Virus record (IMG/VR): IMGVR_UViG_3300050343_000191
Coordinates: 167,086-231,085 of that record
Direction: 5' to 3' (one strand)
Length of the DNA stretch: 64,000 nucleotides
In this document: positions 6,472 through 42,719 of the stretch, in pieces
How the letters are laid out: each line of letters starts with the position of its first letter
How positions within the stretch are numbered: the stretch's first letter is position 1
The notes under the pieces: generated by a model
What the model was told of the DNA's origin: nothing
Database searches by the model: none
The model's input: only the letters and a program-made list of their open reading frames with translations
Made by a program: the position numbers and the translations under genes

Positions 6472-7086
6472 TCAGTAAACCCTACGCTCTTCTCCATATA
6501 GTGTTACGATTGCGTTGAATGAAATTGTTATTCGTGGTTTTTCAGTTGCCTTGCCAGGTGGTACACAATGCTGCAAATATGAAGGAAACATCAACAAATC
6601 TCCCTCTTCAATTTTTGGAACATATACCTCACCACAATTGTTTGAGTTCATCTCCAAACTCAAATACCTCATAGATCTCAGAGGATCCCAAAATTCAGGT
6701 GGTTGGTGCTCATCTTTATCATAAGATAAAAAATGAATGAACGAGAAATGAGAATGGTTTATCTTAGAGTACAGATGATCGTGAATTTCTTGGTACTCAC
6801 CATCTCGATACACATTATACCAAAGATCAGTGAAGTGCAATCCATATTGATCATCAAAAAATTCATCAATCGTATTGTGATAGATGTTCAACAAGATATC
6901 TTTATCTTTCTCGATGAAATCTTTTTCTTGATTAAAAGAAGTAAGAATTTTATTAGTGGTCCAGTCTTCAGGTATTTCTAGTTCATCTAGAGAATCTAGT
7001 ATAGATTGAACTAGATTTTGTTTTAGAATCTCGTTTCCATTTACTCTAGATTGAAATATAGTTACTGGAAATACTTCCGTTTTCAT
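6472..7086 (-). CDS. 2OG-Fe(II) oxygenase (TIGR02466-like)
   Basis: YQEIHDH, LLMFPSYLQHCV and RITISFN motifs. Confidence 0.8.
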   Translation of the reverse strand: MKTEVFPVTIFQSRVNGNEILKQNLVQSILDSLDELEIPEDWTTNKILTSFNQEKDFIEKDKDILLNIYHNTIDEFFDDQYGLHFTDLWYNVYRDGEYQEIHDHLYSKINHSHFSFIHFLSYDKDEHQPPEFWDPLRSMRYLSLEMNSNNCGEVYVPKIEEGDLLMFPSYLQHCVPPGKATEKPRITISFNAIVTLYGEERRVY

Positions 7087-18900: not shown

Positions 18901-18985
18901 TGCGAGTAGGGAGACTTGAACTCCCACGAGATTAATTCTCAACAGATTTTAAGTCTGGTGCGTCTACCGATTCCGCCATACTCGC
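18901..18985 (-). tRNA. trnL: tRNA-Leu(UAA)
   Basis: GCGAGTA acceptor stem, GGCGGAATCGGTAGACGC D arm, CTTAAAA anticodon loop, long variable arm, GTTCAAG T loop; no encoded CCA. Confidence 0.92.
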
Positions 18986-18989
18986 TTAG

Positions 18990-19062
18990 TGCTTCCTGTG
19001 AGGATCGAACTCACCTTAGGCAAATTATGAGTTTGCTGCATTCACCAGATTGCTAAGGAAGC
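18990..19062 (-). tRNA. trnM: tRNA with CAU anticodon (Met, or lysidine-dependent Ile2)
   Basis: GCTTCCT/AGGAAGC acceptor stem, GCAAA-CTCATAA-TTTGC anticodon arm, GTTCGAT T loop. Confidence 0.88.
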
Positions 19063-19065
19063 AGA

Positions 19066-19137
19066 TAGGAATGCCGAGAATTGAACTCGGATGACCCCGT
19101 TATAAGCAGGGCGCATTAACCATTATGCGACACTCCC
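19066..19137 (-). tRNA. trnI: tRNA-Ile(UAU)
   Basis: GGGAGTG/CATTCCT acceptor stem, CCCTG-CTTATAA-CGGGG anticodon arm, GTTCAAT T loop. Confidence 0.85.
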
Positions 19138-39185: not shown

Positions 39186-39821
39186 TTAGATCCACTCAAG
39201 TGCTTCTGCACAGGTGGGAAATTGTTCAATAAAGATCTTTTTACAACCTTCTGCAAGATCCATATGCTCTTTCTGAGTACCGTTAGCAGTTCTCAGATTT
39301 ATGTAATGGATCCACGACCTACATGAGCCCGACATATAGATTTTGGTGGGTGTGGCGAGTGGGAGCACAAAACGAGCACACTCTTTTGCAATCGATGCAT
39401 CAAGCATCTCTTTGTATAGTTTCATTCCTTCTTCAAAATGTTTTTGCATTTTGATTTGGAATTCTTGATGAGTAAACGCATCAATATCATCAATAGAATT
39501 CTGACGATTCTTAGTGTCTTGTCTCCGAAGTTCTGGAAGAGGAATTGTATCCGCAAGCATAGAACTATCAGCATACCGTTGAGAAAATTCTTGATATGTG
39601 AAAGATCTATGGCGGAGCACTTGAGCTGCCACACCTCTAGTAGTTTCCAATTCAAGAGTCATAAATGCCTGCTCAAACACTGACCAGTGGTTGTGCTTGA
39701 TGCAGTATCCTAGCAATTTTGCATAATTTGGATTCTCTTGATTGTTAGGGTTTGACACACGAGCAACGTATGCCATCATTTTCTCCGCATCGGGAGTTAC
39801 ACTAATCAGTTTTACACTCAT
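39186..39821 (-). CDS. thyX: Flavin-dependent thymidylate synthase
   Basis: HWSVFE and the ThyX motif RHRSFTYQEFSQRY. Confidence 0.95.
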   Translation of the reverse strand: MSVKLISVTPDAEKMMAYVARVSNPNNQENPNYAKLLGYCIKHNHWSVFEQAFMTLELETTRGVAAQVLRHRSFTYQEFSQRYADSSMLADTIPLPELRRQDTKNRQNSIDDIDAFTHQEFQIKMQKHFEEGMKLYKEMLDASIAKECARFVLPLATPTKIYMSGSCRSWIHYINLRTANGTQKEHMDLAEGCKKIFIEQFPTCAEALEWI

Positions 39822-40182: not shown

Positions 40183-40210
40183 AAAAAAAGGGGGAGGTTT
40201 CCCCCCCCCG
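40183..40210 (-). terminator. Intrinsic terminator
   Basis: G-rich stem, GAAA loop, C-rich arm and U7 on the minus strand. Confidence 0.7.
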
Positions 40211-40514: not shown

Positions 40515-40543
40515 AAAAAAAGAGAGGGTTATAAACCCTCTCT
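40515..40543 (-). terminator. Intrinsic terminator ending the riboswitch unit
   Basis: AGAGAGGGTT-TAT-AACCCTCTCT 10-bp stem followed by a U6 tract. Confidence 0.85.
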
Positions 40544-40561: not shown

Positions 40562-40729
40562 TCACTTAGTATAAGTACGACCACGATAGCAGAATGTACC
40601 GTGCGACTCTTTACTTTCTACACAACGAGTATCATACTCAACACCACGATATGAGGTGTGGGTAATCTGTGCGTTGTGAAGTGCAGATGCTTTGTTGATC
40701 TGCTGTTTTACCATTTGAAGGGTGTTCAT
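40562..40729 (-). CDS. DUF4278-like 55 aa protein (not in ORF track)
   Basis: MNTLQMVKQQINKASALHNAQITHTSYRGVEYDTRCVESKESHGTFCYRGRTYTK, with two YRG motifs and an AGGAG RBS. Confidence 0.7.
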   Translation of the reverse strand: MNTLQMVKQQINKASALHNAQITHTSYRGVEYDTRCVESKESHGTFCYRGRTYTK

Positions 40730-40764
40730 TGTAGTTACTCCTAAAGTAGTTGGATTTTTAGGTC

Positions 40765-40994
40765 CGTTCCTTTAGTCGTTTGCGTCCCATGGATAGCAAT
40801 CAGGTGTAGATTCCTTTACGGCTTCTATTAGTTCAATCTTAACTTGGTTGTCAAGATTTTTATTATTCCTCATCCGAAACATAATAGCATCGGCATCAGA
40901 ACAACTGAGTGATGAATATAAAAGTAATTCAATCATGGGATGAACGGCTCCGTTCCGCGACTTACTTGCGTCCCACTCAAGAGTGGGATGAACG
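40765..40994 (-). ncRNA. Tandem glutamine-riboswitch-like aptamers (glnA / Downstream-peptide family)
   Basis: Two units of CGTTCA-P2-CGCAA...GGAACGG: 40951-40994 with an 8-bp P2, and 40765-40946 with a 7-bp P2 TCCCATG/CATGGGA enclosing a long loop. Confidence 0.7.
40772..40936 (-). CDS. 54 aa ORF nested in the second aptamer (not in ORF track)
   Basis: MIELLLYSSLSCSDADAIMFRMRNNKNLDNQVKIELIEAVKESTPDCYPWDAND; GGAG 11 nt upstream. Confidence 0.6.
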   Translation of the reverse strand: MIELLLYSSLSCSDADAIMFRMRNNKNLDNQVKIELIEAVKESTPDCYPWDAND

Positions 40995-41003
40995 TCAGGT
41001 CTT

Positions 41004-41032
41004 ATTATAGACCTTATGCATTATTTAGTCAA
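41004..41032 (-). promoter_or_regulatory. Sigma70-type promoter with an embedded late-promoter motif
   Basis: TTGACT-17 nt-TATAAT; CTAAATA overlaps the -35 element and spacer; first aptamer starts 9 nt after the -10. Confidence 0.8.
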
Positions 41033-42304: not shown

Positions 42305-42637
42305 CTAATTTTTCTTCCTTGCCGTTAAGGAAAACTCAAAGTAGATAGTTACTTCCCTATTGAAAAAGGAAACCATCTGATCAAATATAATATGAAATGG
42401 TTTTTTCTGCTTCTTCCCCCCGTTAAGAATAAGTTCAACTCCGCGATTCACCTCACGGATGGTAGTTTTATTTATGTCTCGATTAGATAACTTTTTCTTC
42501 TCTGAGAAACTGAATGGTGTCACTACATCCTCCCAACTTTTGATCATCACAAAGAACTTGTGGAAAGGTTGAACCATTTCCAAATTTACCATAGAATTCT
42601 TCTCGCGTAAAGTCTCTGTCAAGTTTATACTCAACAA
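42305..42637 (-). CDS. Hypothetical protein; probably only the 3' half is coding
   Basis: NRGVELIL...FFNREVTIYFEFSL; the 5' part overlaps glutaredoxin. Confidence 0.45.
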   Translation of the reverse strand: MLSINLTETLREKNSMVNLEMVQPFHKFFVMIKSWEDVVTPFSFSEKKKLSNRDINKTTIREVNRGVELILNGGKKQKKPFHIIFDQMVSFFNREVTIYFEFSLTARKKN

Positions 42638-42719
42638 ATCTCTTACCAGTCATCTCTAGGACTGTCATTATTTTAGTGCAGAAAGGGCAACCTGCCTTTG
42701 AATATACTAAAAAATTCAT
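42483..42719 (-). CDS. nrdC: Glutaredoxin
   Basis: CPFC, TFPQV, LGGCSD; extended -10 TGTGCTATAAT at 42742-42752. Confidence 0.88.
   Translation of the reverse strand: MNFLVYSKAGCPFCTKIMTVLEMTGKRFVEYKLDRDFTREEFYGKFGNGSTFPQVLCDDQKLGGCSDTIQFLREEKVI

What the first reader, a model, noticed from the sequence alone, without database searches (positions are those of the whole stretch)
40765..40994. Phage tandem glutamine-riboswitch-like RNA with a whole protein-coding gene inside the second aptamer
Seen in the sequence (minus strand): a consensus promoter (41004-41032) is followed 9 nt after its -10 by CGTTCA-TCCCACTC-TT-GAGTGGGA-CGCAAGTAAGTCGC-GGAACG, a GAGC linker, and a second unit CGTTCA-TCCCATG-[about 140 nt]-CATGGGA-CGCAAACGACTAAA-GGAACG. 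The ATG of a 54-codon ORF (40936) lies in the 5' strand of the second P2 helix. Its last codons (P-W-D-A-N-D-stop) form the 3' strand of P2 and the junction before P1. Its likely RBS (GGAG, 40948-40951) spans the end of aptamer 1 and the linker. Established: CGUUCA...GGAACG P1 with a variable P2 is the architecture of glnA and Downstream-peptide glutamine riboswitches of cyanobacteria. Inference: translating the nested ORF and folding aptamer 2 should be mutually exclusive, giving a nitrogen-status switch between two small phage proteins, or a ribosome-coupled riboswitch. I do not recall such a nested arrangement being described, but could not check.
Basis: partly seen in the sequence, partly recalled or inferred. 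Interest (0 to 1): 0.9.

Follow-up and report, generated by a model that had tools for sequence, protein, structure and literature searches.

The report
Gene nested inside phage glutamine riboswitch
A marine cyanophage carries a glutamine-sensing RNA switch, built from two interlocked sensor cores, that has a complete small protein gene sitting inside one of its hairpin loops, so that reading the gene and folding the sensor must compete; I found no published description of this arrangement.

Summary
On the minus strand a near-consensus promoter drives an RNA that starts at CGUUCA and ends at a strong terminator. It holds two glutamine-aptamer-like units, a 54-codon ORF inside the hairpin of the second unit, and a downstream DUF4278 (IF17-like) gene.

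In 156 distinct related elements from cyanomyoviruses:
- The hairpins are either short (11-47 nt) or hold a whole ORF (142-234 nt).
- The ORF frame is open in 150 of 156 inserts; each other frame is open in 0-5.
- dN/dS is about 0.3 and two cysteines are invariant.
- The closing stem covaries and is favoured by the native coding sequence.

The two units are not independent tandem aptamers:
- Their tails pair through a covarying helix flanked by loop-E-type AGUA and GAA.
- A compensatory swap shows that GAACG of unit 1 pairs with CGUUC of unit 2.
- Insert-free relatives pass Rfam's glutamine model only as this composite.

The nested ORF's stop codon lies inside a hexamer that is complementary to the downstream gene's ribosome-binding region.

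That translation and sensing are coupled is inferred, not shown. I rate it a new variant of a known kind, of high interest.

The parts
41004..41032 (-). Sigma-70-type promoter: TTGACT, 17-nt spacer, TATAAT. An inverted repeat (GGTCT..AGACC) straddles the -10.
   Evidence: Matches 11 of 12 positions. In 110 of 156 related elements a -10-like hexamer ends 7-9 nt before CGUUCA(1).
40989..40994 (-). CGUUCA(1): 5' strand of the outer P1 helix, at or next to the RNA 5' end.
   Evidence: Sequence. Aligned as P1 by the Rfam Glutamine model in insert-free relatives.
40971..40988 (-). Hairpin 1 (UCCCACUC-UU-GAGUGGGA), the variable hairpin of the outer core.
   Evidence: 100% paired, with compensatory changes at 3 of 4 pairs in the alignment of insert-free elements. 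Carries an ORF in 30 of 156 related elements.
40963..40970 (-). CGC linking strand followed by AAGUA, the loop-E 5' strand.
   Evidence: CGCAAGTA begins all ten unit-1 tail types seen among the 156 parsed elements, although the parser itself required the CGCA. Matches the Rfam consensus CGgAAGUA.
40958..40962 (-). AGUCG: 5' strand of the inter-unit helix (P3 of the composite aptamer).
   Evidence: Pairs with CGACU at 40778-40774. Positions 1, 2, 4 and 5 are paired in at least 155 of 156 elements, with compensatory changes.
40950..40956 (-). GGAACGG(1): pairs with CGUUC(2) to form the inner helix.
   Evidence: Compensatory GCAACGG / CGTTGA variants occur with both outer strands unchanged. The inner hairpin is present in the MFE folds.
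40948..40951 (-). GGAG, the likely ribosome-binding site of the nested ORF, lying in or next to the inner hairpin loop.
   Evidence: Present in 102 of 126 elements with an ORF in unit 2 and in 0 of 30 without.
40941..40946 (-). CGUUCA(2): 5' strand of the inner helix.
40785..40940 (-). Hairpin 2: stem UCCCAUG (40940-40934) with CAUGGGA (40791-40785), closing a loop that is the ORF.
   Evidence: Stem positions 2-6 are 87% paired against 13-58% in slid registers, and positions 1-5 are each paired in 115-126 of 126 elements, with C-G/U-A/U-G variation at position 4. Ensemble probability of the stem is 0.91 for the element identical to the window's (L008, 0.78 codon-shuffled); the median over 57 elements is 0.81 native against 0.31 shuffled.
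40772..40936 (-). Nested gene, 54 codons plus stop: a small acidic two-cysteine protein (phrog_504).
   Evidence: Frame open in 123 of 126 unit-2 inserts. dN/dS 0.27-0.32. C12 and C47 invariant. AlphaFold2 two-helix hairpin with pLDDT 84.7.
40779..40784 (-). CGC(2) linking strand plus AAA.
   Evidence: Sequence. CGC is invariant and the following three bases nearly so (A, A or C, A) in the insert-free elements.
40774..40778 (-). CGACU: 3' strand of the inter-unit helix. Its U is the first base of the nested ORF's stop codon.
   Evidence: The stop falls at this position in 117 of 126 unit-2 ORFs.
40771..40773 (-). AAA (GAA in many relatives): the loop-E 3' strand.
   Evidence: The position is G or A followed by AA throughout. 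Aligned to GAAG of the Rfam consensus (L098).
40764..40770 (-). GGAACGG(2): 3' strand of the outer P1, plus the G that pairs with the C of CGC.
   Evidence: Pairing role from PMC6698751.
40738..40775 (-). Expression platform: anti-SD CUAAAG (40775-40770) against CUUUAG (40746-40741), which overlaps the SD AGGAG (40742-40738).
   Evidence: Fully complementary (6 of 6) in 132 of 141 elements against 1.5% of shuffled leaders. It covaries: A goes with UUUAG and G with UU(U)CAG. The helix is present in the MFE folds.
40562..40729 (-). Regulated gene: 55-aa DUF4278 / IF17-like protein with two YRG motifs (phrog_545).
   Evidence: Pfam DUF4278 at 21.8 bits for this copy. 44 of 47 diverse orthologues match. 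phrog_545 at E 2e-35.
40521..40543 (-). Intrinsic terminator that ends the transcription unit.
   Evidence: 10-bp stem followed by a T-run.

Best explanation
This is a cyanomyovirus glutamine riboswitch controlling a DUF4278 (IF17-like) gene. A separate small protein gene has been captured inside an aptamer hairpin loop.

Shown by comparative analysis:
1. The RNA starts at CGUUCA(1) and contains two glutamine-aptamer cores that are interlocked rather than side by side.
   - CGUUC(1) pairs with GAACG(2), forming the outer P1.
   - GAACG(1) pairs with CGUUC(2), forming the inner helix.
   - The two tails pair with each other (AGUCG with CGACU), forming a shared P3 flanked by loop-E-type AGUA and RAA.
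2. The apical loop of hairpin 2 is filled by a conserved, selected protein gene. In relatives the ORF sits in hairpin 1, in both hairpins, or in neither.
   - Its AUG lies in the 5' strand of the stem.
   - Its stop codon is the U-A-A that spans P3 and loop E.
3. The hexamer containing that stop codon (CUAAAG) is complementary to the sequence overlapping the Shine-Dalgarno of the DUF4278 gene.

Inferred:
- Without glutamine, unit 2's tail pairs with the SD and the downstream gene is off.
- Glutamine stabilises P1, loop E and P3, which frees the SD. This is an ON switch, as shown for cyanobacterial gifB.
- A ribosome initiating on the nested ORF must open the inner helix and the hairpin-2 stem.
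- A ribosome terminating on it sits on P3, loop E, the outer P1 and the anti-SD.
- So translating the nested gene and folding the sensor are mutually exclusive. Nested-gene translation should transiently unmask the downstream SD (translational coupling), while the folded, glutamine-bound state should hide the nested AUG.
For: Identity as a glutamine riboswitch:
- Rfam hits to unit 1.
- Insert-free relatives pass the Glutamine gathering score only as the composite: 41.1, 43.6 and 41.0 bits against 35. L098 has the window's exact tails.
- The core features match PMC6698751.

Interlocked fold:
- The inter-unit helix is paired in at least 155 of 156 elements at four positions, with compensatory changes.
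- The formal count gives 97.1% of cells paired against at most 57.7% in slid registers, and 7 pairs changed on both sides.
- GCAACGG(1) with CGTTGA(2) occurs while both outer strands stay unchanged.
- The composite fold is 1.3-3.7 kcal/mol more stable than the side-by-side fold.

Nested gene:
- Hairpin lengths are bimodal.
- The frame is open in 123 of 126 and 27 of 30 inserts; each other frame is open in 0-5.
- It is one protein family, with dN/dS 0.27-0.32 and two invariant cysteines.
- The structure model is confident.
- Free-standing homologues exist.
- The GGAG in the linker is tied to the presence of the ORF.
- The closing stem covaries and is favoured by the native codon order in 55 of 57 elements.

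Expression platform:
- The hexamer is fully complementary in 132 of 141 elements, against 1.5% of shuffled leaders, and it covaries.
- The helix appears in the MFE folds.
- The same principle was proposed for gifB (PMC6212724).
- The downstream protein is DUF4278.
Against: - No ligand-binding, structure-probing or expression data exist for any of these phage elements. The direction of switching is taken by analogy.
- The window's own composite cannot be scored by a covariance model because of the 156-nt loop; only the halves are found.
- The P1 strands are invariant, so the outer P1 is inferred by elimination plus one compensatory event in the inner helix, which probably arose only once.
- The window has AAA where the consensus loop E has GAA.
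- If nested-ORF translation unmasks the downstream SD whenever it occurs, it could blunt the glutamine response rather than refine it.
- The elements are phylogenetically related, so the counts and p-values overstate independence.
- Whether the inner core binds glutamine is unknown.
Confidence: 0.6

Rival explanations
1. Passenger gene in a permissive loop. The element is one functional glnA-type aptamer (outer P1, hairpin 1, long-range P3 with loop E). Everything inside P3 is scaffold that merely brings the P3 strands together. The small gene sits there because the loop tolerates insertions, and its translation has no regulatory link to glutamine sensing.
For: - The Rfam model needs only the outer parts.
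- The inner hairpin loop tolerates an insertion of about 100 nt in L024.
- The protein family also exists as ordinary free-standing genes.
- ORFs have moved between the two loops like cassettes.
Against: - The inner unit keeps every aptamer-core nucleotide (CGUUCA, UCC..GGA, CGCA, GGAACGG) even in ORF-free elements. That is more than a scaffold would need.
- The start and stop codons sit precisely in helix strands and in the anti-SD.
- A ribosome on the last codons must physically occupy P3, loop E and P1, so some coupling is hard to avoid.
- GGAG co-occurs with the ORF inside the conserved junction.
Confidence: 0.25
2. Two independent side-by-side aptamers. Each CGUUC pairs with the GGAACG of its own unit, and the ORF lies in the hairpin of the second aptamer.
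For: - Each unit has a full set of core motifs.
- Unit 1 alone gives sub-threshold Rfam hits.
- In the longer-tail class a single unit can pass the gathering score on its own: 38.1 and 36.7 bits.
- The 2010 alignment treats the units as separate tandem hits.
Against: - The compensatory GCAACGG(1)/CGTTGA(2) swap would put a mismatch in both helices of this fold.
- The covarying inter-unit helix and the facing AGUA/RAA strands are left unexplained.
- It is less stable in nearest-neighbour energies.
- Class-I units fail the gathering score individually.
Confidence: 0.05
3. Decayed switch. Insertion of the ORF destroyed sensing, and the flanking half-sites persist only as coding sequence, translation signals or the anti-SD.
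For: - A stem of 5-7 bp closing a loop of about 150 nt is marginal on paper.
- A natural single-unit deletion variant exists (L017).
Against: - The stem still covaries across the insert.
- The native coding sequence favours stem closure over codon-shuffled versions in 55 of 57 elements.
- The core sequences are the same in ORF-bearing and ORF-free elements.
- 69 of 70 RNA-unbiased loci keep a complete or near-complete two-unit element.
Confidence: 0.06
4. The insert is a structured non-coding RNA domain and the open frame is not translated.
For: No direct translation evidence was available here. The insert is predicted to fold compactly.
Against: - Only one of six frames is kept open.
- dN/dS is about 0.3.
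- There are exactly two Cys at conserved spacing in all 74 diverse members.
- The protein model is confident.
- Free-standing homologues have ordinary ribosome-binding sites.
Confidence: 0.03

Closest known systems
Glutamine-I riboswitch (glnA RNA, Rfam RF01739)
   Same: - CGUUC/GAACG P1.
- A variable hairpin directly after CGUUCA.
- A CGN linking strand.
- AAGUA ... GAA loop E flanking P3.
- Lies in the 5' UTR of a DUF4278 gene.
- Insert-free phage elements pass the family's gathering score.
   Different: - P3 is not a local hairpin. It is a long-range helix between two units and encloses a second core.
- The linchpin pair is C:G, as in Glutamine-II, not G:C.
- One or both hairpin loops hold a 50-75-codon gene.
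- The window's own element does not reach the gathering score.
Glutamine-II riboswitch (Downstream-peptide motif, RF01704; structure 6QN3)
   Same: - CGUUCA-hairpin-CGCA core.
- GGAACGG with the C:G long-range pair.
- A downstream short ORF with YRG motifs.
- The apical loop of the first hairpin is dispensable for binding; the authors replaced it with UUCG.
   Different: - There is no local 3' hairpin enclosing GGAACG.
- Scores are below gathering: 25.6-32.1 bits against 33.
Tandem (doublet or triplet) glutamine riboswitches (Weinberg 2010; Sherlock et al. 2022, PMC9481103)
   Same: - Two or three units lie upstream of one gene.
- These marine sequences are already in the 2010 glnA alignment.
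- 157 doublets and 4 triplets were reported.
- L199 is a triplet.
   Different: - They are described as separate, pseudo-cooperative riboswitches.
- In this element the units share a helix and exchange P1 strands.
- The 2022 survey discarded candidates with intervening ORFs, so ORF-bearing units would have been missed.
- I could not read Ames & Breaker 2011 to see whether an interlocked arrangement was noted there.
uORF inside the M. tuberculosis metE B12 riboswitch aptamer (Kipkorir et al. 2024, PMC11260477)
   Same: A translated ORF overlaps an aptamer, and its translation alters expression of the downstream gene.
   Different: - That uORF is about 16 codons long, starts with UUG, is weakly translated and is not known to encode a conserved protein.
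- The phage ORF fills a hairpin loop and encodes a conserved, selected protein family.
- Its start and stop codons are built into helix strands and the anti-SD.
ORFs in peripheral loops of group I and group II introns (my own knowledge, not tested here)
   Same: A protein gene sits in a loop of a structured, functional RNA where it does not disturb the core, and it sometimes extends into core sequence.
   Different: - Those are self-splicing introns with homing endonuclease or maturase genes.
- The host RNA in this case is a metabolite sensor, and the protein shows no sign of nuclease or mobility functions.

Membership tests
Glutamine riboswitch (Gln-I / glnA RNA, RF01739) | Scores at or above the Rfam gathering threshold (35 bits). 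| tested here: inconclusive
   In the window, unit 1 alone scores 24.7 bits and there is no hit at gathering. Natural insert-free homologues with the same tails score 41.0-43.6 bits as the composite. The ORF-filled loop prevents direct scoring.
Glutamine riboswitch (Gln-I / glnA RNA, RF01739) | P1 CGUUC/GAACG, a hairpin after CGUUCA, and a CGN linking strand whose last base pairs with the base after GAACG. | tested here: met
   All are present in both cores. The hairpins covary. The C...G linchpin combination is as in Gln-II. The P1 strands are invariant, so there is no covariation for the outer P1.
Glutamine riboswitch (Gln-I / glnA RNA, RF01739) | Three-way junction with P3 and a loop E (AGUA opposite GAA). 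| tested here: met
   AAGUA-AGUCG ... CGACU-AAA. The helix covaries. The window has AAA where many relatives have GAA. P3 is long-range rather than a local hairpin.
Glutamine riboswitch (Gln-I / glnA RNA, RF01739) | Selective binding of L-glutamine. | not testable with these tools
   Needs in-line probing, ITC or SHAPE.
Glutamine riboswitch (Gln-I / glnA RNA, RF01739) | Lies in the 5' UTR of a DUF4278 / IF17-like gene, with the aptamer's 3' part able to pair with the RBS. | tested here: met
   DUF4278 in 44 of 47 orthologues. The anti-SD is complementary in 132 of 141 elements and covaries. The model is in PMC6212724.
Glutamine-II riboswitch (RF01704) | GGAACG lies in the loop of a local 3' hairpin, forming a pseudoknot with CGUUC; gathering score 33 bits. 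| tested here: not met
   Scores are 25.6 bits (window unit 1) and 32.1 bits (L004 unit 2), and the 3' hairpin pairs are poor.
Independent tandem riboswitches (pseudo-cooperative doublet) | Each aptamer folds on its own, with its own P1. | tested here: not met
   Compensatory change between GAACG(1) and CGUUC(2). Covarying inter-unit helix.
DUF4278 (PF14105) / IF17-like glutamine synthetase inactivating factor | Pfam match at the curated cut-off (25.3 bits). | tested here: inconclusive
   The window copy scores 21.8 bits (E 2.5e-4), below the cut-off. 44 of 47 orthologues match at E of 0.01 or better, best 2.3e-7. The two YRG motifs are invariant. Inhibition of glutamine synthetase was not tested. 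Short picocyanobacterial homologues lack the C-terminal residues needed for GS binding in Synechocystis (PMC6212724).
Nested protein family (phrog_504 and relatives) | Profile match, two conserved cysteines and a helical hairpin. | tested here: met
   phrog_504 at E 1.5e-27. C12 and C47 invariant in 74 sequences. Model pLDDT 84.7. The function is unknown, with no PDB fold match.

The most novel reading that the evidence does not exclude
A ribosome-gated riboswitch. Two interlocked glutamine-binding cores share one helix, and a protein gene lies inside the sensor. Initiation, elongation and termination on that gene successively dismantle the inner core, the hairpin and the outer core together with the anti-SD. 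The phage would thereby combine glutamine level with translational status to choose between, or to order in time, two small proteins: a secreted-type two-cysteine protein and an IF17-like factor that may act on host glutamine synthetase. The interlocked, strand-exchanged double aptamer would itself be a new riboswitch architecture.
Probability: 0.4. Interest if true: 0.9.

Novelty: new variant of a known kind. Interest (0 to 1): 0.8.

Why it matters
Riboswitch aptamers are treated as non-coding, and surveys discard candidates that are interrupted by ORFs.

This case shows a metabolite sensor that has repeatedly hosted a real gene in its hairpin loops. The start codon, the stop codon and the anti-SD are all built into sensor helices. 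The arrangement is conserved across hundreds of abundant marine cyanophages.

- **A natural test system.** ORF-free, one-ORF and two-ORF versions all exist in cultured phages. These can be used to ask how translation and RNA sensing interfere with or cooperate with each other.
- **Missed aptamers.** Covariance-model searches systematically miss split aptamers, so more may be hidden in other genomes.
- **Phage biology.** The phage appears to carry the host-like regulatory logic (a glutamine switch, possibly with an NtcA-type operator) in front of an IF17-like gene. That points to manipulation of host nitrogen assimilation during infection.
- **RNA architecture.** The strand-exchanged double aptamer bears on how tandem aptamers achieve sharper responses.

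Tried and rejected
- **Rfam on the window.** At gathering threshold the whole window gave only three tRNAs.
- **My own covariance model.** Built from 23 insert-free elements, it could not bridge the ORF. It returned unit 1 and the 3' half as separate hits, so the requested test with the hairpin-2 ('P2') loop removed had to be replaced by natural insert-free homologues.
- **Cellular genomes.** The three cyanobacterial hits were ordinary coding sequence. Absence from hosts is therefore not established.
- **Protein function.** Pfam gave nothing for the nested protein. Foldseek against the PDB gave nothing with E below 1.
- **Papers.** Ames & Breaker 2011 and Ren et al. 2015 were not available.
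- **Errors corrected.** My first anti-SD test used a hexamer one base out of register and was redone. A relaxed parser for strand variants produced many spurious outer-strand calls, and only the clean GCAACGG/CGTTGA class was used.
- **Fold models.** I considered and rejected the side-by-side tandem fold. I also considered a pseudoknotted, Gln-II-like version in which each unit keeps its own P1 and the units share the helix. The inner-helix compensatory swap and the facing AGUA/RAA strands argue against it.
- **Unit 1 ORFs.** The idea that they are a separate family was rejected. All nested proteins form one cluster and have swapped sites at least twice.
Full report
**1. What is in the window**

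Reading the minus strand gives, in order:
- Promoter TTGACT-17-TATAAT, 41032-41004, matching 11 of 12 positions.
- After 9 nt, CGUUCA(1) at 40994-40989.
- Hairpin 1, 40988-40971.
- CGCAAGUA-AGUCG-C, 40970-40957.
- GGAACGG(1), 40956-40950.
- A short linker containing GGAG, 40951-40948.
- CGUUCA(2), 40946-40941.
- Stem strand UCCCAUG, 40940-40934.
- A 54-codon ORF, 40936-40772.
- Stem strand CAUGGGA, 40791-40785.
- CGCAAA-CGACU-AAA, 40784-40771.
- GGAACGG(2), 40770-40764.
- A 34-nt leader with AGGAG, 40742-40738.
- A 55-codon ORF, 40729-40562.
- A strong intrinsic terminator, 40543-40521.

CGTTCATCC occurs twice in 64 kb, only here, against 0.26 expected.

**2. Is it a glutamine riboswitch?**

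At Rfam's gathering scores the window has no riboswitch hit. In a search of the locus alone, unit 1 matches Glutamine-II (25.6 bits, E 2e-4) and Glutamine (24.7 bits, E 3e-3). Both are below threshold.

The locus is conserved at 70-80% identity in more than 420 cyanomyovirus records. Among them are natural versions without any insert. On these, the Rfam Glutamine model passes its gathering score of 35:
- L004, 41.1 bits.
- L106, 43.6 bits.
- L098, 41.0 bits; its tails are identical to the window's.

It passes only by joining the 5' half of unit 1 (CGUUCA-hairpin-CGCAAGUA-AGU) to the 3' end of unit 2 (ACU-RAAGGAACG), with everything between placed in the P3 loop.

The core nucleotides agree with the solved Glutamine-II structure. 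That paper describes the CGUUC/GAACG helix, the CGC strand in its groove, and the C pairing with the G after GAACG. It also shows that the first hairpin's loop can be replaced without losing binding (PMC6698751).

**3. Survey of related elements**

I collected loci from IMG/VR in two ways: by the downstream protein, which is unbiased for the RNA, and by the junction pattern. Together with the loci fetched from annotated phage records and the window itself, parsing gave 156 distinct elements.

- Hairpin lengths are bimodal: 11-47 nt or 142-234 nt, with one of 408 nt.
- 23 elements have no insert, 103 have one in unit 2 only, 23 have one in both units, and 7 have one in unit 1 only.
- Among 70 protein-anchored loci with enough upstream sequence, 62 have the exact two-unit element.
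- Seven of the remaining eight are variants of it. Five carry the compensated inner helix, one has an insertion of about 100 nt in the inner loop, and one shows only one CGTTCA within the 520 nt searched, probably because hairpin 1 is long.
- One locus, L017, is a single-unit deletion form.

**4. The inserts are genes**

- The frame set by an AUG 4-5 nt into the 5' stem strand is open across the insert in 123 of 126 (unit 2) and 27 of 30 (unit 1) cases. Each of the other five frames is open in 0-5.
- Stops fall at fixed places in the RNA core. In unit 2 the usual stop is the U-R-A spanning CGACU and RAA (117 of 126). In unit 1 it is the UAA of CGCAAG-UAA or a stop in the 3' stem strand. This explains the WDAND ending.
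- All 148 distinct products form one BLAST cluster.
- dN/dS is 0.27-0.32 at dS of about 1.
- In 74 diverse members the only invariant columns are two cysteines. Every member has exactly two, 32-40 residues apart, after a hydrophobic N-terminal segment, and the body of the protein is acidic.
- AlphaFold2 gives a confident two-helix hairpin, pLDDT 84.7, with no informative PDB match.
- The family is phrog_504, phrog_6471 and phrog_13397, all of unknown function.
- A profile search of 1.8 billion representatives finds 341 clusters.
  - Most of the best hits end in the RNA-encoded ...DAxD.
  - Some read the core in another frame.
  - Four hits with unrelated C-termini were checked, and all four are ordinary free-standing genes with normal ribosome-binding sites or 4-nt gene overlaps.
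- So a pre-existing small-protein gene was captured into the loops.
- A tree shows at least two well-supported moves between the unit 1 and unit 2 sites.
- The GGAG in the linker is present in 102 of 126 elements with a unit-2 ORF and in none of 30 without.

**5. The stem still closes around the gene**

- Positions 2-6 of the closing stem are 80-87% paired, against 13-58% in slid registers, and positions 1-5 are the consistently paired ones. There are C-G/U-A/A-U changes at positions 3-4.
- In 55 of 57 elements the native ORF gives a higher ensemble probability for the stem than codon-shuffled versions of the same ORF. The medians are 0.81 and 0.31.

**6. The two units are interlocked**

- The segment after AAGUA in unit 1 pairs with the segment before RAA in unit 2.
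  - Positions 1, 2, 4 and 5 are paired in at least 155 of 156 elements.
  - Compensatory changes include G-C to A-U, G-C to U-A and A-U to G-C.
  - A longer class has an 8-bp version that switches U-A to A-U.
- On 23 insert-free elements the composite structure has 97.1% of cells paired, against at most 57.7% in slid registers, and 7 pairs changed on both sides.
- AGUA and RAA face each other at one end of this helix, as in the loop E of glnA RNAs.
- The decisive evidence is in L041, L055, L068 and L087, with L071 as a variant. There, GGAACGG(1) has become GCAACGG and CGUUCA(2) has become CGUUGA, while CGUUCA(1) and GGAACGG(2) are unchanged.
  - This preserves a GAACG(1):CGUUC(2) helix.
  - It would put a mismatch into both helices of a side-by-side tandem.
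- Nearest-neighbour energies also favour the composite fold, by 1.3-3.7 kcal/mol.
- Because the inner unit keeps every core nucleotide even where there is no ORF, I think it is a second, circularly permuted binding core that shares P3 with the outer one. That is inference.

**7. Expression platform**

- The hexamer CU-R-AAG in unit 2's tail comprises the end of P3, loop E and the first G of GGAACG.
- It is fully complementary to the leader 9-11 nt before the downstream AUG in 132 of 141 elements. The figure for shuffled leaders is 1.5%.
- It covaries: A goes with UUUAG in 52 of 60 cases, G goes with UU(U)CAG in 47 of 81, and A never occurs with the C form.
- The unconstrained MFE folds contain this helix together with the inner hairpin.
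- This matches the ON-switch model proposed for gifB, in which the aptamer's 3' nucleotides mask the RBS until glutamine binds (PMC6212724).
- The downstream protein has two invariant YRG motifs and matches DUF4278 in 44 of 47 orthologues. Glutamine riboswitches control this family in cyanobacteria.

**8. How it probably works**

What is shown: the anatomy, the coding status and the complementarities.

What is inferred:
- Glutamine stabilises the outer P1, loop E and P3, which frees the SD of the IF17-like gene.
- A 30S subunit on the nested AUG would cover GGAACGG(1), the linker, CGUUCA(2) and the stem strand.
- A terminating ribosome would cover CGACU, RAA and GGAACGG(2), but not the SD about 30 nt further on.
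- So nested translation excludes sensor folding and should transiently unmask the downstream SD.
- The folded, ligand-bound state buries the nested AUG.
- Whether the outcome is reciprocal expression, ordered expression or coupling cannot be decided from sequence.

**9. What is known and what is new**

Already known:
- Glutamine riboswitches in T4-like cyanophages (PMC9964418).
- Tandem glutamine aptamers.
- The link to DUF4278.
- The 2010 glnA alignment already holds these marine sequences, as separate tandem hits. ORF-bearing units appear there only as unaligned flanks.
- One precedent for a short translated uORF inside an aptamer, in the M. tuberculosis metE B12 riboswitch (PMC11260477).

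In eight full-text searches I found no description of a conserved protein gene inside an aptamer loop, nor of the strand-exchanged double aptamer. Ames & Breaker 2011 was not readable here.

**10. Limits**

- There is no experimental evidence for binding, structure or translation.
- The elements are related, so counts are not independent events.
- The outer P1 is invariant.
- The cellular-genome scan was truncated.
- The window belongs to an uncultured cyanomyovirus with no close isolate.

Noticed in passing
window 41001-41016 (minus strand), and the 40 nt upstream of CGUUCA(1) in related loci: An inverted repeat straddles the -10 box: GGTCTATAATAAGACC in the window and GTATGCTAACATAC in L091-type elements. 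GT-N10-AC lies 1-5 nt before CGUUCA(1) in 58 of 156 elements, against 1.7% of shuffles. It resembles the NtcA site consensus (my own knowledge). NtcA represses gifA and gifB in cyanobacteria. This may be a second, transcriptional nitrogen control.
   Followed up: partly
L017 (IMGVR_UViG_3300017735_001824), upstream of 1201: A single-unit variant: promoter, then CGTTCA-TCCCATG-[ORF]-GGGACGCAAACGACTAAAGGAACGG. Everything between the two CGTTCA repeats is missing. It is either a natural deletion by recombination between the repeats or an assembly collapse.
   Followed up: no
L024 (IMGVR_UViG_3300021964_006878): An insertion of about 100 nt lies between GGAACG(1) and CGTTCA(2), that is, in the loop of the inner helix.
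   Followed up: no
L199, near 6500-6860: A triplet arrangement. An extra unit with a class-II type tail precedes an ORF-bearing unit and a third unit, and the last two pair through AGUCA/UGACU.
   Followed up: no
public protein databases (P0002-P0120): Many gene callers predict 75-81-aa versions of the nested protein. These start at an in-frame codon in the promoter or unit 1, upstream of the likely transcription start. Two of these 81-aa entries (P0002, P0007) carry the JGI name 'uncharacterized OsmC-like protein'. These are probably mis-annotations.
   Followed up: partly
window 40989-40994 with 40724-40729: In MFE folds, CGUUCAU(1) pairs with AUGAAC, the start codon and second codon of the MNTL-type DUF4278 gene. 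Genes of the MAQV type lack this complementarity. It may be an artefact of where I cut the sequence.
   Followed up: no
window 18901-19137 (minus strand): A cluster of three tRNA genes.
   Followed up: no
window 39186-39821 (minus strand) and 42483-42719 (minus strand): The 39186-39821 ORF is a flavin-dependent thymidylate synthase (ThyX-like), judged by the annotation of its homologues. The 42483-42719 ORF looks like a glutaredoxin or thioredoxin (CPFC motif; identification from my own reading, not tested). This is typical cyanomyovirus context.
   Followed up: no
window 40186-40209 (minus strand): A second very strong terminator-like hairpin (G9-AAA-CCTCCCCC followed by a T-run) lies after the next small gene.
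   Followed up: no
L106 1021-1116: A PhotoRC-II RNA (57.1 bits) lies on the same viral contig as an insert-free glutamine element.
   Followed up: no
inter-unit helix position 3 in the longer-tail class: There is a conserved non-Watson-Crick C.A (or A.C, A.A) at position 3, and an A.C at position 6, of the 8-bp version of the helix. The 5-bp class has U-A at position 3.
   Followed up: no
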